In this document: positions 55,965 through 62,904 of the stretch, in pieces
How the letters are laid out: each line of letters begins with the position of its first letter
How positions within the stretch are numbered: position 1 is the stretch's first letter
NCBI RefSeq assembly: GCF_006345805.1
Contig: NC_043003.1
Span: forward strand, 92,504,001 to 92,568,000
From: Octopus sinensis
Lineage: Eukaryota
Reading direction: 5' to 3'
Length of the DNA: 64,000 nt
Made by a program: the position numbers and the translations under genes
The notes under the pieces: generated by a model
What the model saw: the letters and a program-made list of their open reading frames with translations, nothing else
The model's database searches: none
Told to the model about the DNA's origin: nothing

Positions 55965-58900
55965 AATATTTTATTTTTTTATTTTATTTTCAGTTTTTTT
56001 AAAATTTTATCTATTTATTTATGTTTATTTTTTATTTTTATATTTATTTTTATTTTTTCATTTTATTTTAATTTATTTTATTTTTATTTTATTTCTATTG
56101 TTTTACTTTTATTGTATTTTATTGTTTTTTTATTTTATTTTATTTTATTATTTTTTTATTTTATTAAATTTTTAGTTTTTTGTTTTATTTTTTATTTCAT
56201 TTTATTTTATTCTATTTTATTTTATTATTTTATTTTATTTTATTTTTATTTTATTTATTTTAAATTATTTTTATATATTTTTGTTTTATTTTATTTTGTT
56301 ATTTTATTTTAGTTTTCATTTTTTTTTATTTAAATTTAAAAAATTTTTTCACTTTTTATTTTATTTATTTTTTTATTATATTTTTTCTTTTCTTTTATTT
56401 TTATTTTTTATTTTTTGTATTTATTTTTTTATAAATTTTATTTTATTTAAATTTTATTTATTTATTTATTTATTTTTTATTTTATTTATTTTATTTAAAA
56501 AATGTTTAATATCTATTTTTAAAATTTTATTTTATTTTATTTTATTTTTATTTATTTTTATTTTATTTTTGAAAATTTTTACTTAGTTTTAATTTATTTA
56601 ATTAATTTTTTTTAAATAAAATAAAATATCTCCGCGTATCTTCGCCTATCTCACTCTATCTCCGCCTATCTCACTCTCACTGTATCTCCGCCTATTTCAT
56701 GCTCGCCCTCTCACCCAGCATTATTGGGCCCTAAATGCTATTCCGCCAATCTCCGGTTATCTCCGTCTATCTCCGCAATCTCCGGCAATCTCCGGCTATC
56801 TCCGGCAATCTCCGGTAATCTCCGGCCATCTCCGGCTATCTTCGACAATCTCCGACAATCTTCGGGAAACACCGGCAAACTCCGGCAAACTCCGGCAAAC
56901 TTCGGCAAACTTCAGCAAACTCCGGCAATCGCCGGCAACCTTCGACAATCTCCGGCAAACTCCGGCAATGTCCGGGAAACTCCGCCAATGTCTGTCAAAC
57001 TCCGCCAATCTCACTTTATCTCCGCCTATCTCACTCTATCTCCGCCTATCTCACTCTATCTCCGCCTATTTCACTCTATCTCCGTCTATCTCTTTCTATC
57101 TCCGCCAATTTCACTCTATCAAACTCTATCCCAGGTGTTTTAACACACAACATTATTGGGAAATCTCCAAAAATGCCATTCCGCCTATCTCCATGAATCT
57201 CAGCCTATCTCCGCTAATCTCCGCCAATTTCACTCTATCTCCGCAAATCTCCGCCAATCTCACTCTATGTCCGCCTATCTCACTCTCTCTCGTGTGTTTT
57301 AACACCCAAAATTATTGGGAAACTCCCAAAATGCTATTTCGCCTATCTCCGCTTATTTCCGCGTATCTCCGCCAATCTTCGCTTATCTCCGCCAATCTCC
57401 GCCCATCTACGCCAATCTCACTCTCTCCCCCTCTCCCAGGTGTTTTAACACCCAGCATTATTGGGAAATCTCCCAAAATGCTATTCCGCCTATCTCCAGC
57501 AATCTCCGACAATCTCCAGCAATATCCGCCTATCTCCACCTATCTCCGCAAATCTCCGCAAATATCTGCCTATCTTACTCTATCTCCGCCTATCACACTT
57601 TTTCTCCGTCTATCTCACTCTATCTCCGCCAATCTCCGCCTACCTCAGTCTATCTCCGCCTATCACACTCTACCTCCACCTATCTCGGCCTATCTCACTC
57701 TATCTCTTCCTATCTCACGCTATCTTCACCTATCTCACTCTATTTCCGCCTATATCACTCTATCTCCGCCTATCTCACTCTATCACACTCTCTCTCAGGT
57801 GTTTTAACACCCAGCATTATTGGGAAATCTCCCAAAATGCTATTCTGCCATCTCCGTGTATCTCCGCCTATCTCAGCCTATCTCCGGAAATTTCTGCCAA
57901 TCTCCGCCAATCTCCGCACCCCTTCGCCAATCTCCGCCAATCTCACTCTTTCCCTCTCTCCCATGTGTTTTAACACCCAGCATTGTTGGAAAATCTCCCA
58001 AAATGCTATTCCGCCTATCTCCGGCAATCTCCAGCAAACTCCGGGAAACTCCGGTTAACTCGGGCAATCTCTGGCAAACTCCGGCAATCTCCGGAAATTT
58101 TCGGTAAACTCCACCAATCTACGGCAATCTCTGGCAAACTCCGGCAAACACCGCCAATCTCACTATATCTCCGCCTATCTCAATGTATTTACGCCTATCT
58201 CACTTTATCTACGCCTATCTCACTCTATCTACGCCTATCTCACTCTGTCTCACTCTCGCCCAGGTGTTTTAACACCAGCATTATTGGGAAATCTCCCAAA
58301 ATGCTATTCTGCCATCTCCGTGTATCTCCGCCTATCTCAGCCTATCTCCGGAAATTTCTGCCAATCTCCGCCAATCTCCGCACCCCTTCGCCAATCTCCG
58401 CCAATCTCACTCTTTCCCTCTCTCCCATGTGTTTTAACACCCAGCATTGTTGGAAAATCTCCCAAAATGCTATTCCGCCTATCTCCGGCAATCTCCAGCA
58501 AACTCCGGGAAACTCCGGTTAACTCGGGCAATCTCTGGCAAACTCCGGCAATCTCCGGAAATTTTCGGTAAACTCCACCAATCTACGGCAATCTCTGGCA
58601 AACTCCGGCAAACACCGCCAATCTCACTATATCTCCGCCTATCTCAATGTATTTACGCCTATCTCACTTTATCTACGCCTATCTCACTCTATCTACGCCT
58701 ATCTCACTCTGTCTCACTCTCGCCCAGGTGTTTTAACACCCAGCATTATTGGGAAATCTCTCAAAATGCTATTCCGTCTATCTCCACCAATCTCCGCCTA
58801 TCTCCGCCAATCTAATTCTATCTCTGCCAATCTCCGCTAATCTCCACCTGATTCACTCTGTCTCCGCCTTTCTCACTCTATCTCCGCCTATCTCACTCTA

Positions 58901-61900: not shown

Positions 61901-62904
61901 ATTTTAATTTAAATAAAAAAATTTAAAAATAAAAAAATAAAATAAGAAAGTAAAATAAAATGAAATAAAAAATGGAATGAAATAAATTAAAATAAAATAG
62001 AATAAAATAAAATAAATAAAATTTTTATTTTATTTTATTTTATTTCGTTTTTTATTTTATTTTTTATTTTATTGTATTTTATTTTTTATTGTATTTTATA
62101 TTATTTATTTTTTGTTATTTAATTTTTTTATTTTATTTTATGGTTTTATTTTTATTTTATTTTATTTTATATTTTTATTTTATTTTATTTTTTATTTCTT
62201 TTATTTTTTTTATTTCAATTTATTTTAATTTAATTTCATTTCTATTTTAGTTTTCATTTTATTTTATTTTTTTATTTTATTTAATTTTATTTTTTATTTT
62301 TTATTTTATTTCCTTTTATTTTGTTTTATTTTATTTTATTCTGTTTTATATATTATTTATTGCCTTTTTAAATTTAATTTAATTTTTTTATTTTATTTTA
62401 GTTTATTTCAATTTTTAAAAAAATATTACCATTTTTTAATTTATCTTATTCATTTTATTTCATTTTATTTCATTCTATCTCTGCCAATCTCCGCCAATCT
62501 CCGCCTGTCTCACTCTATCTCCGCCTATCTCACTCTATCTCCGCCTATCGCACTCTATCTCCGCCTCTCTCACTCTATCTCCGCCTATCTCACTCTATCT
62601 CCGCCAATCTCACTCTATCTCAGCCTGTCCCAGATGTTTTAACACCCAGCATTATTGGGAAATCTCCCTAAATGCTATTCCGCCAATCTCCGGCTATCTC
62701 CGTAATCTCCGGCTATCTCCGGAATCTCCGGCAATCTCCGGCTATCTCCGGTAATATCTCCGGCTATCTCCGGCAATATCTCCGGCAATCTTCGGTAATC
62801 TCCGGCAAACTCCGGCAAACTCCGGCAAACTCCGGCAATCTTCGGTAATCTCCGGCAAACTCCGCCAATGTCACTCTATCTCCGCCTTTCTCACTCTTAT
62901 CTCC
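55965..62904. repeat. Hierarchical composite satellite: AT blocks (55965-56625, 59431-60312, 61751-62475) alternating with C-rich blocks (56626-59430, 60313-61750, 62476-62904)
   Basis: AT blocks are (TTTTA)/(AAAAT) runs. C-rich blocks are TATCTCCGCC, TATCTCACTC, AATCTCCGGC and AAACTCCGGC units plus 15 copies of a ~55-bp landmark. Confidence 0.95.

What the first reader, a model, noticed from the sequence alone, without database searches (positions are those of the whole stretch)
55965..62904. Three-level composite satellite with a strict internal grammar
Seen: level 1 is 9-10-bp monomers of two classes, G-type (AATCTCCGGC/AAACTCCGGC) and P-type (TATCTCCGCC alternating with TATCTCACTC). Level 2 is 140-410-bp units, typically landmark, G-tract, P-tract. 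Level 3 is multi-kb repeats of [AT block + C-rich block]. The C-to-AT junctions at 59430 and 61750 are near-identical over hundreds of bases, and landmark variants recur in order (58724~61063; 58913~61312~62630). The plus strand is strongly C-over-G skewed and dense in CCGG. Inference: ~10-bp periodicity, abrupt AT/GC alternation and higher-order structure suggest a structural locus (centromeric, pericentromeric or subtelomeric, or nucleosome-phasing) or the interior of a giant element. I do not recognise it as a described family.
Basis: partly seen in the sequence, partly recalled or inferred. Interest (0 to 1): 0.8.

Follow-up and report, generated by a model that had tools for sequence, protein, structure and literature searches.

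The report
Complex tandem repeat in octopus genome
A 6.9-kb stretch of non-coding DNA, almost certainly from an octopus genome, is built from 10-base motifs nested inside two larger levels of repetition; it is real and apparently undescribed, but it is an ordinary kind of satellite-like repeat and nothing shows that it marks a centromere or a chromosome end.

Summary
Window 55966-62904 is three AT blocks (4-6% GC, 5-bp period) alternating with three C-rich blocks (49-52% GC). The C-rich blocks consist almost entirely of 382 monomers, 94% of them exactly 10 bp, and 15 copies of a 56-bp landmark, all on the + strand. The order landmark, CCGG-type run, alternating CCGCC/CACTC run is far from random.

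The "grammar" looks like shared ancestry. Units are duplicates of one another, and super-unit copies are only 80-92% identical and differ in unit number (10, 4 and 1). Two very recent internal duplications exist: 465 bp (463/465) and 119 bp (118/119).

The host is an octopod: an RT ORF and many SINE-like repeats match Octopus bimaculoides. No coding domain, Rfam family, published sequence or related locus was found. No cephalopod genome could be searched by DNA.

The best reading is a lineage-specific complex satellite or minisatellite array grown by nested slippage and tandem duplication. AT-rich palindromes sit at the super-unit junctions. The sequence has a strong in-silico nucleosome rotational-positioning signature, whose function is untested. 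Centromeric and subtelomeric readings have no support here. Interest is low to moderate.

The parts
55966..56625 (+). AT block 1: T-rich (ATTTT)n-like arm only, 4% GC
   Evidence: It aligns colinearly with the T-rich arms of AT2 and AT3, so its first base maps within about 10-20 bp of their palindrome centres.
56626..59430 (+). C-rich block 1: 10 landmark units (U01-U10), 49% GC, 55 CCGG sites
59431..60312 (+). AT block 2: mostly A-rich arm 59431-59687, then T-rich arm 59688-60312. The central ~150 bp is a near-palindrome.
   Evidence: Strand-switch profile. Self-inverted match 59616-59761 at 88.6%. DNA fold -39.1 kcal/mol, z -9.9.
60313..61750 (+). C-rich block 2: 4 landmark units (U11-U14)
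   Evidence: Matches to block 1 are 80-90% identical.
61751..62476 (+). AT block 3: A-rich arm 61751-62021, then T-rich arm 62022-62476, with a palindromic centre
   Evidence: z -5.3.
62477..62904 (+). C-rich block 3: one landmark unit (U15). It is cut about 64 bp before the position of the C-to-AT junction in the other copies.
   Evidence: The 11-bp variant monomer CTCTTATCTCC recurs at 59352, 61673 and 62893.
57435..57490 (+). Consensus copy of the 56-bp landmark. The other 14 start at 56700, 57130, 57289, 57794, 57960, 58259, 58424, 58723, 58912, 60390, 60656, 61062, 61311 and 62629. It contains two adjacent palindromes: GGTGTTTTAACACC and AGCATT-A-TTGGGA/AATC/TCCCAA-AATGCT.
   Evidence: DNA fold -13.2 kcal/mol, z -5.5. 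No compensatory changes; mutations simply break the pairs.
57794..58722 (+). Very recent tandem duplication of a 465-bp two-unit segment: 57794-58258 = 58259-58722, 463 of 465 columns identical
58981..59218 (+). Very recent 119-bp tandem duplication inside the CCGG-type tract of U10 (118/119 identical)
62905..64000 (-). Right flank, not part of the repeat: a decayed non-LTR retrotransposon reverse-transcriptase fragment with frameshifts, cut at the array edge
   Evidence: ORF fragments. Weak RVT_1 match, E 6.5e-4.
55590..55969 (.). Left flank, not part of the repeat: a MITE-like segment bounded by 27-nt inverted repeats, abutting the first base of the array
   Evidence: I3, 93% complementary.

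Best explanation
This is a lineage-specific, non-coding complex tandem repeat (a satellite-like or minisatellite-based array) in an octopod genome. It was built by nested rounds of local amplification and is probably not under selection for a sequence-specific function.

Step 1, inferred. Replication slippage or unequal exchange amplified one 10-bp motif family with the core (A/T)A(T/A)CTC. This gave CCGG-type, CCGCC-type and CACTC-type monomers.

Step 2, shown by the pattern of shared variants. An ancestral unit of a 56-bp landmark, a CCGG-type run and an alternating CCGCC/CACTC run was duplicated in tandem many times. The 'grammar' is the inherited layout of that unit, blurred by local expansion and contraction.

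Step 3, shown. A 2.3-3.7 kb super-unit was duplicated in tandem. It reads T-rich (ATTTT)n arm, C-rich block, A-rich (AAAAT)n arm. Each junction between copies is therefore an AT-rich near-palindrome. The window holds two full copies and one internally deleted, 3'-cut copy: 55966-59687, 59688-62021 and 62022-62904.

Step 4, shown. The process is still going on, or was until very recently, as the 465-bp and 119-bp near-perfect duplications indicate.

The left edge of the whole array falls at or very near the centre of such a palindrome. This fits breakage at a hairpin or cruciform tip followed by joining to unrelated DNA (inferred).

Physically, the C-rich tracts should wrap histone octamers in a fixed rotational setting, and the A-tract blocks should disfavour nucleosomes. 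The locus would then carry an unusually regular nucleosome pattern. I treat that as a by-product of the sequence, not a demonstrated function.
For: Tandem, same-strand, three-level structure.

Units group by shared diagnostic variants: U05~U07, U06=U08, U09~U13, U10~U14~U15, U02~U12, U01~U11. This is what duplication of whole units predicts.

Super-unit copies are 80-92% identical and have different unit counts. The recent duplications are 463/465 and 118/119 identical.

No coding or RNA signal was found. There are no Pfam domains in the five longest ORFs on either strand. No Rfam match reaches E<=1. No protein in 5.8 billion resembles the 279-aa ORF.

The landmark palindrome shows no compensatory change, and its mutations break the pairs, so structure is not visibly selected.

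The AT-block centres fold as long hairpins, z -9.9 and -5.3. AT1 aligns to the T-arms only, which places the array start within about 10-20 bp of the palindrome centre.

The flanks are unrelated transposon debris, and no other copy lies in the remaining 57 kb: 0-1 occurrences of each 9-mer outside against 18-55 inside.

The host is an octopod. An RT ORF is 80% aa and 85.6% nt identical to O. bimaculoides LOC106872601, and a 21.7-kb O. bimaculoides locus gives 61 blastn matches to the window, most of them short SINE-like repeats.

Nucleosome signature. A 10-bp TATAAACGCC repeat is a known nucleosome-positioning sequence (Widlund et al. 1999, as cited in PMC5946947). The monomer TATCTCCGCC shares 7 of 10 positions with it.
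Against: No cephalopod genome could be searched by DNA, so copy number and genomic distribution are unknown. The family could be abundant, clustered or transposon-borne.

The window ends 1.1 kb beyond the array, so the wider context to the right is unseen.

The alignments that place the left edge at the palindrome centre run through low-complexity AT sequence and are imprecise.

The near-perfect internal duplications could be assembly artefacts.

CpG is not depleted (o/e 1.2 against 0.79 in the rest of the window; CpG sites change no faster than other C, 0.106 against 0.116). That is compatible with neutrality in an unmethylated region. It could also reflect youth, homogenisation or constraint.
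Confidence: 0.72

Rival explanations
1. The repeat is cargo of a mobile element. Each 2.3-3.7 kb super-unit would be one copy of a non-autonomous element that carries an internal tandem-repeat array next to a microsatellite. Mollusc and Drosophila Helentron-derived HINEs are like this, or it could be another DNA element with AT-rich inverted ends. The three copies would then be head-to-tail insertions or concatemers.
For: In oysters, satellite-like arrays are typically carried by HINEs. Their left flank ends in a microsatellite and their right flank has a palindrome. They insert in T-rich sites, and Helitrons can occur in tandem with truncated copies (PMC7492417).

Here a microsatellite-like block precedes each repeat block. 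The super-unit has inverted AT-rich ends. A small conserved palindrome lies 30-80 bp after each C-to-AT junction. The array starts close to a super-unit boundary.
Against: No second copy lies in 57 kb of flanking sequence, nor in 21.7 kb of O. bimaculoides.

No recognisable non-low-complexity termini or sub-terminal inverted repeats were found. In a two-letter AT sequence, inverted matches and small palindromes are expected by chance: z is only -2.1 to -3.8 for the small ones.

The array is far longer and more layered than the short HINE arrays described. The third copy is cut and abuts a decayed LINE, with no insertion signature.
Confidence: 0.17
2. It is a chromosomal structural locus. The window would show the edge or an outlier of a centromeric, pericentromeric or subtelomeric satellite domain whose main arrays lie elsewhere or beyond the window.
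For: It has hierarchical higher-order structure, strong strand asymmetry and a 10-bp period with a nucleosome-positioning signature. The surroundings are rich in transposons and microsatellites. No octopus centromere repeat has been described in the literature I could search, so the slot is open.
Against: The array is 6.9 kb and ends on both sides within the window. Copies are 80-92% identical rather than homogenised. No (TTAGGG)n adjoins it: the only telomere-like runs are about 45-bp interstitial ones 30 kb away. A high-scoring tRNA gene lies 1.4 kb away.
Confidence: 0.06
3. It is a selected protein-binding or chromatin-organising array. The palindromic landmark and/or the 10-bp monomers would be reiterated binding sites for a lineage-specific DNA-binding protein, for example one of the greatly expanded octopus C2H2 zinc-finger genes. 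The AT palindromes would act as boundaries.
For: The landmark is two adjacent palindromes, a typical shape for dimeric binding sites, and folds far better than shuffles (z -5.5). There are 382 near-identical 10-bp sites. CpG is retained.
Against: The landmark is no better conserved than the monomers: mean column identity is 86% over the 90-column alignment of landmarks with their flanks, against about 90% per-site identity of monomers to their class consensus. No compensatory or symmetric conservation is seen. No relatives are available to test conservation between species. Palindromes also arise and persist neutrally in satellites.
Confidence: 0.05

Closest known systems
Classical complex (hierarchical) satellites, such as bovine 1.711 satellites built on 23-bp sub-repeats, mouse major satellite built on 9-bp ancestral oligomers, and the ~2-kb G+C-rich satellite of the Bermuda land crab with microsatellite-like divergent domains (recalled from memory, not checked here)
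   Same: Short oligomer sub-repeats are nested in longer units, and those are nested in kb-scale repeats. Simple-sequence tracts are embedded in the unit. Strand asymmetry is strong. All are non-coding.
   Different: Those are abundant, homogenised, multi-hundred-kb heterochromatic arrays. Here only 2.4 diverged super-unit copies are seen and abundance is unknown. No sequence similarity was tested.
Satellite-like tandem repeats carried by Helentron-derived HINE elements in molluscs (Cg_HINE of Crassostrea gigas, PMC7492417) and DINE-1 in Drosophila
   Same: The host is a mollusc. A microsatellite-like block lies upstream of a tandem-repeat array. Palindromes sit near the end. The context is T-rich. 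The array is short and sits in transposon-rich DNA rather than in a huge heterochromatic block.
   Different: HINE arrays are a few copies of monomers longer than this 10-bp motif (for example the Cg170 family), flanked by defined modules with 11-12 bp sub-terminal inverted repeats, and they are dispersed in many copies. None of these could be shown here. This locus has three nested levels and a 10-bp base monomer.
TATAAACGCC-type 10-bp nucleosome-positioning repeats (Widlund et al. 1999, cited in PMC5946947)
   Same: The period is exactly 10 bp, with an AT-rich half and a CG-containing GC-rich half. TATCTCCGCC matches 7 of 10 positions. WW and SS dinucleotides lie in near antiphase.
   Different: That sequence was defined by measured histone affinity. 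No affinity or occupancy data exist here. The resemblance is about how it may behave, not about membership.
Palindromic AT-rich repeats (PATRRs) at human translocation breakpoints (recalled from memory)
   Same: Both are near-palindromes of a few hundred bp with almost pure AT content, predicted to extrude long hairpins (z -9.9). An array boundary maps near a palindrome centre.
   Different: The arms here are unequal (about 260 against 450-620 bp) and imperfect (about 84-89%). Breakage at the centre is inferred, not observed.

Membership tests
Satellite DNA with higher-order repeat structure | Head-to-tail tandem repetition of a monomer on one strand | tested here: met
   382 monomers and 15 landmarks, all on the + strand. 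Lag-10 identity is 0.6.
Satellite DNA with higher-order repeat structure | Higher-order copies are more alike than neighbouring lower-order units, and are repeated many times | tested here: inconclusive
   Cognate units in different super-units share diagnostic variants and are 83-92% identical. There are only 2.4 super-units, with unequal content (10, 4 and 1 landmarks).
Satellite DNA with higher-order repeat structure | High genomic abundance or long arrays | not testable with these tools
   No cephalopod assembly can be searched by DNA. The array in the window is 6.9 kb with both ends visible.
Centromeric satellite | Association with CENP-A or the primary constriction | not testable with these tools
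   This needs ChIP or FISH.
Centromeric satellite | Large homogenised array | tested here: not met
   6.9 kb, bounded by unrelated DNA. Copies are 80-92% identical.
Subtelomeric repeat | Adjacency to terminal (TTAGGG)n | tested here: not met
   No telomeric repeat lies within or next to the array. The only runs are short interstitial ones at 20117-20165 and 26619-26658. The 1.1 kb to the right is a LINE fragment.
Helentron/HINE-borne tandem repeats | Microsatellite at the end of the left flank, upstream of the array | tested here: met
   A T-rich (ATTTT)n block precedes each C-rich block. It is much longer (450-660 bp) than the short microsatellites described.
Helentron/HINE-borne tandem repeats | 11-12 bp sub-terminal inverted repeats plus a 3' palindrome in defined flanking modules | tested here: inconclusive
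   Inverted matches and a small palindrome exist, but only in low-complexity AT sequence, where they are expected by chance.
Helentron/HINE-borne tandem repeats | Many dispersed copies with the same flanks, and empty sites | not testable with these tools
   None in the other 57 kb of the window or in 21.7 kb of O. bimaculoides. The genome is not searchable.
rDNA intergenic-spacer sub-repeats | Location between rRNA genes | tested here: not met
   No rRNA match anywhere in the 64-kb window at Rfam gathering thresholds.
Macrosatellite (kb-scale unit, D4Z4/DXZ4-like) | Tandem unit of at least 1 kb, repeated many times, often with an ORF or defined protein sites | tested here: inconclusive
   The unit is 2.3-3.7 kb in tandem. 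There are only 2.4 copies and no ORF with a domain.
Intrinsic nucleosome-positioning sequence | About 10-bp periodic AT-rich dinucleotides in antiphase with GC-rich dinucleotides | tested here: met
   The phase difference is about 150 degrees at 10-10.2 bp. 72-77% of 147-bp windows exceed the background 99th percentile.
Intrinsic nucleosome-positioning sequence | Measured high histone-octamer affinity or phased occupancy in vivo | not testable with these tools
   This needs reconstitution or MNase-seq.

The most novel reading that the evidence does not exclude
The locus is one member of a so far undescribed octopod satellite family with a chromatin role. The 10-bp tracts would fix nucleosomes rotationally. 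The double-palindrome landmark would recruit a lineage-specific DNA-binding protein. The AT palindromes would act as fragile or nucleosome-free boundaries. In large arrays elsewhere this could be the octopus centromeric or heterochromatin-nucleating repeat, which has not yet been identified.
Probability: 0.07. Interest if true: 0.6.

Novelty: new member of a known kind. Interest (0 to 1): 0.3.

Why it matters
Cephalopod genomes are about two-thirds repeats. Even so, the most detailed octopus repeat annotation I could read does not use the word satellite at all (PMC13282606), and no cephalopod satellite or centromere repeat turned up in the literature searches.

A curated description of this family would fill a small gap in repeat libraries. 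It should cover the 56-bp landmark, the three 10-bp monomer classes and the AT-palindrome junctions. With it, one BLAST search would show whether the family is local, dispersed or centromeric.

The locus is also a compact natural example of three things. A 'grammar' can arise from nested duplication. AT-rich palindromes coincide with repeat boundaries. A 10-bp repeat reproduces the textbook nucleosome-positioning signature. None of this is surprising in kind.

Tried and rejected
1. Coding sequence. The long + strand ORFs (up to 279 aa) and the 95-aa - strand ORFs are artefacts of a stop-poor 10-bp repeat. They have no Pfam domains and no homologue among 5.8 billion proteins.

2. Structured RNA or a known RNA family. 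No Rfam match reaches E<=1. The landmark hairpins show no covariation.

3. rDNA spacer. There is no rRNA in the window.

4. Relatives elsewhere.
- The landmark 20-mer gave only three chance single matches in JGI metagenomes, with no flanking similarity.
- It gave none in IMG/VR, and neither did a 29-mer from the CCGCC/CACTC (P-type) tract.
- A 22-mer dimer of the CCGG-type monomer hit two high-GC prokaryotic MAGs, but only as ~40-bp chance micro-repeats.

5. Literature. Monomer strings gave only chance primer-like hits. Searches on octopus or cephalopod satellites found nothing relevant. The octopus genome paper itself is not held.

6. Germline methylation decay. CpG sites are not hypermutable relative to other C.

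7. The array as a simple insertion into the right-flank LINE. The left flank does not continue the LINE.

8. Looking up the window's own RT ORF to name the source assembly. It is not on record.

9. A resemblance of TCCCAAAATGC in the landmark to the vertebrate Staf/ZNF143 site. It is recalled from memory and was picked post hoc from many possible motifs, so I do not count it as evidence.
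Full report
**What is there**

Reading window 55500-64000 and profiling composition shows six abutting blocks.

| Block | Coordinates | GC | Notes |
|---|---|---|---|
| AT1 | 55966-56625 | 4% | 72% T |
| C1 | 56626-59430 | 49% | |
| AT2 | 59431-60312 | 6% | |
| C2 | 60313-61750 | 50% | |
| AT3 | 61751-62476 | 6% | |
| C3 | 62477-62904 | 52% | |

- The C-rich blocks have C 0.37-0.39 against G 0.12-0.13.
- They carry 102 CCGG sites in 4.67 kb, against 1.6 per kb in window 1-55000.
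- Their CpG observed/expected ratio is about 1.2, against 0.79 in window 1-55000.
- Base identity at lag 10 is 0.59-0.62 in the C blocks, against about 0.25 at neighbouring lags.
- The AT blocks peak at lag 5 (0.65-0.69). Tandem Repeats Finder reports the same periods.

**Level 1: monomers**

I segmented the tracts between landmarks by dynamic programming against five consensus monomers. This gave 382 monomers, 359 of them exactly 10 bp.

| Monomer | Count |
|---|---|
| AATCTCCGGC | 107 |
| AAACTCCGGC | 42 |
| TATCTCCGCC | 94 |
| AATCTCCGCC | 44 |
| TATCTCACTC | 95 |

Of these, 126 are perfect and 145 are one edit from consensus. Monomers plus landmarks account for essentially all of the 4.67 kb.

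**Level 2: landmark units**

A 56-bp landmark, CCCAGGTGTTTTAACACCCAGCATTATTGGGAAATCTCCCAAAATGCTATTCCGCC, occurs 15 times. All copies are on the + strand and all lie inside 56700-62684. None occurs elsewhere in the window.

After a landmark comes one of two things: a run of CCGG-type monomers, or a mix of CCGCC-type monomers. Then follows a strictly alternating CCGCC/CACTC run, which usually ends in two CACTC-type monomers and about 3 nt before the next landmark.

Transition frequencies:
- CCGG-type to CCGG-type: 0.83
- CACTC-type to CCGCC-type: 0.80
- CACTC-type to CCGG-type: 0.02

The number of CACTC-before-CCGG inversions within units is 81, against 464 +/- 47 in shuffles, with 0 of 5000 shuffles as low. 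The grammar is therefore real. The units are not independent, however.

The alignment of landmarks with their flanks shows shared diagnostic variants:
- U05~U07
- U06=U08
- U09~U13
- U10~U14~U15
- U02~U12
- U01~U11

The simplest reading is that the order is the inherited layout of one ancestral unit, copied again and again.

**Level 3: super-units**

Self-comparison finds colinear matches at offsets of about 2300-2400 bp.

| Segment 1 | Segment 2 | Identity |
|---|---|---|
| 59196-59459 | 61516-61781 | 89.8% |
| 58528-58901 | 60881-61240 | 86.6% |
| 58853-59174 | 61252-61584 | 83.2% |
| 61166-61434 | 62484-62751 | 92.2% |

- The three C blocks hold 10, 4 and 1 landmarks.
- C2 looks like C1 with the middle units missing.
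- C3 starts in the middle of the U13-type unit.
- C3 stops about 64 bp before the position of the C-to-AT junction. The odd 11-bp monomer CTCTTATCTCC marks the same place at 59352, 61673 and 62893.
- Two near-perfect internal duplications show very recent activity, or assembly error: 57794-58258 = 58259-58722 (463/465) and 58981-59099 = 59100-59218 (118/119).

A rough date is possible from the octopus transposon clock quoted in PMC13282606, where Jukes-Cantor distances of 0.09 and 0.2 correspond to about 25 and 56 million years. On that scale, 8-20% pairwise divergence puts the super-unit duplications at roughly 10-30 million years, if there was no homogenisation. The 465-bp duplication would be well under 1 million years old. 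This is an inference.

**The AT blocks**

AT2 and AT3 are not uniform. A mostly A-rich (AAAAT)n-like arm switches to a T-rich (ATTTT)n-like arm at 59687/59688 and at 62021/62022. The roughly 150 bp around each switch are near-palindromes.
- 59616-59761 matches its own reverse complement at 88.6%.
- As single-stranded DNA the AT2 centre folds at -39.1 kcal/mol, z -9.9.
- The AT3 centre folds at -27.5 kcal/mol, z -5.3.

AT1 has only the T-rich arm. It aligns colinearly with the T arms of AT2 (56004-56570 with 59704-60291) and AT3 (55976-56300 with 62022-62345). This puts the first base of the whole array within about 10-20 bp of the palindrome centre.

The natural super-unit is therefore T arm, C block, A arm: 55966-59687, 59688-62021 and 62022-62904. 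Each junction between copies is an AT palindrome. That the left edge sits at a palindrome centre fits breakage at a hairpin tip. The alignments run through low-complexity sequence, so I hold this loosely.

**The landmark**

It consists of two adjacent palindromes: GGTGTTTTAACACC, and AGCATT-A-TTGGGA / AATC / TCCCAA-AATGCT. It folds far better than shuffles (-13.2 kcal/mol, z -5.5).

Across the 14 distinct copies no pair shows a compensatory change, and nearly every departure breaks a pair rather than conserving it. 90.7% of cells are paired, no better than column shuffles. Mean column identity of the landmark alignment, which includes about 20 bp of flank on the left and 13 bp on the right, is 86%. 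The monomers differ from their class consensus at about 10% of sites. I see no sign of selection on the landmark.

**What it is not**

- The stop-poor repeat gives ORFs up to 279 aa. None has a Pfam domain, and the 279-aa ORF has no relative among 5.8 billion proteins.
- No Rfam family matches at E<=1.
- The whole window has no rRNA, only one tRNA-Ser(GCU) at 54513-54596.
- No telomeric repeat adjoins the array.
- CpG sites change no faster than other cytosines (0.106 against 0.116 per site), although their changes are mostly transitions (45 of 58). There is thus no methylation-decay signal.

**Context and host**

- The right flank (62905-64000, minus strand) is a frameshifted reverse-transcriptase fragment of a non-LTR retrotransposon.
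- The left flank is a MITE-like segment with 27-nt inverted ends at 55590-55616 and 55943-55969, and further inverted repeats lie upstream.
- Neither flank continues the other, so the array is not a simple insertion into the LINE.
- The rest of the window is dense in microsatellites and transposon fragments.
- An intact 359-aa RT ORF (47929-49008) is 80% identical to Octopus bimaculoides LOC106872601.
- The 21.7-kb O. bimaculoides locus around that gene gives 61 blastn matches to the window. The RT gene matches at 85.6% over 1.3 kb, and most of the rest are short SINE-like repeats at 66-92%.
- The window therefore comes from an octopod, but I could not name the species.

**Search for relatives**

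None was found.
- The landmark 20-mer gave three chance hits in JGI metagenomes, with no similarity beyond 20-27 bp.
- It gave none in IMG/VR, and neither did a 29-mer from the CCGCC/CACTC (P-type) tract.
- A CCGG-type dimer hit two high-GC prokaryotic MAGs, but only as ~40-bp micro-repeats.
- The 21.7 kb of O. bimaculoides contains none of the motifs.
- Searching papers for the monomer strings gave only chance matches.
- Searches on octopus or cephalopod satellites found nothing relevant.
- A 2026 detailed repeat annotation of O. vulgaris never uses the word satellite.

No tool here can search a cephalopod assembly by DNA. Copy number and distribution, which are the decisive facts, remain unknown.

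**How it probably behaves**

Any 10-bp monomer with an AT-rich half and a GC-rich half gives the canonical rotational nucleosome-positioning pattern.
- In 147-bp windows, AT-rich and GC-rich dinucleotides are about 150 degrees out of phase at periods of 10.0-10.2 bp.
- 72-77% of C-block windows exceed the 99th percentile of the rest of the window.
- The known positioning repeat TATAAACGCC (Widlund et al. 1999, cited in PMC5946947) shares 7 of 10 positions with TATCTCCGCC.
- By established knowledge of poly(dA:dT) tracts, the (A4T)n blocks should disfavour nucleosomes.

I regard this as a physical property of the sequence, not as evidence of function.

**Verdict**

The best-supported explanation is a lineage-specific complex tandem repeat grown by nested slippage and tandem duplication, with AT palindromes at the super-unit junctions (confidence about 0.7).

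| Alternative | Confidence | Comment |
|---|---|---|
| Transposon-borne origin, HINE-like (PMC7492417) | about 0.17 | Main rival |
| Centromeric or subtelomeric role | about 0.06 | No support in the window, but cannot be excluded without the genome |
| Selected binding-site array | about 0.05 | No sign of constraint |

The sequence family appears undescribed, but the kind of object is well known.

Noticed in passing
window 59614-59763 and 61947-62096: AT-rich near-palindromes of about 150 bp lie at the centre of AT blocks 2 and 3. Predicted DNA hairpins are -39.1 and -27.5 kcal/mol (z -9.9 and -5.3). They resemble human PATRR fragile palindromes, and the left edge of the whole array maps near such a centre.
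   Followed up: partly
window 7981-8048 and 9704-9771: 68-nt inverted repeats (87% complementary), themselves built of 15-bp sub-repeats (AATTCGTCCCCAGTC), lie 1655 bp apart. This looks like a DNA transposon or MITE with sub-repeat terminal inverted repeats.
   Followed up: partly
window 54513-54596 (-): tRNA-Ser(GCU), Rfam 64.6 bits, also called by ARAGORN, lies 1.4 kb left of the array. I did not decide whether it is a functional gene or the head of a SINE.
   Followed up: no
window 20117-20165 and 26619-26658: Two short interstitial telomere-type runs, (GGGTTA)x7.5 and (TTAGGG)x7. They agree with a TTAGGG-telomere animal such as a mollusc.
   Followed up: no
window 47929-49008 (+): An intact 359-aa ORF covers the C-terminal part of a non-LTR retrotransposon reverse transcriptase. 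It is 80% aa and 85.6% nt identical to O. bimaculoides LOC106872601, with close relatives (63-72%) in corals, amphioxus, a sea urchin and a gastropod.
   Followed up: partly
window 13194-13512, 13835-14264, 21634-21836, 24284-24668, 25447-25908, 29966-30396, 49192-49620, 53449-53784: Dispersed SINE-like repeats of about 180-400 bp are shared at 66-92% identity with a random O. bimaculoides locus (L006). One is present as a 216-bp tandem dimer at 13835-14264.
   Followed up: partly
window 55232-55338 / 55613-55719 and 55590-55616 / 55943-55969: Nested inverted repeats (93.5% over 107 nt, and 93% over 27 nt) lie immediately left of the array, which suggests one or two MITE-like insertions. 55107-55236 also matches 31067-31183 at 86%.
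   Followed up: partly
whole window: Microsatellite density is very high: (ATAC)n up to 92 copies at 52131-52499 and 53047-53403, and many (AC)n, (AT)n, (AAT)n and (AAG)n runs, roughly one array per kb.
   Followed up: no
L004 2620-2667 and L005 7405-7449: Two high-GC prokaryotic MAG contigs (a Holophagales bacterium and a Methanoculleus sp.) carry a ~40-bp run of the same 10-bp motif AATCTCCGGC. I judged this chance convergence of a short tandem repeat.
   Followed up: partly
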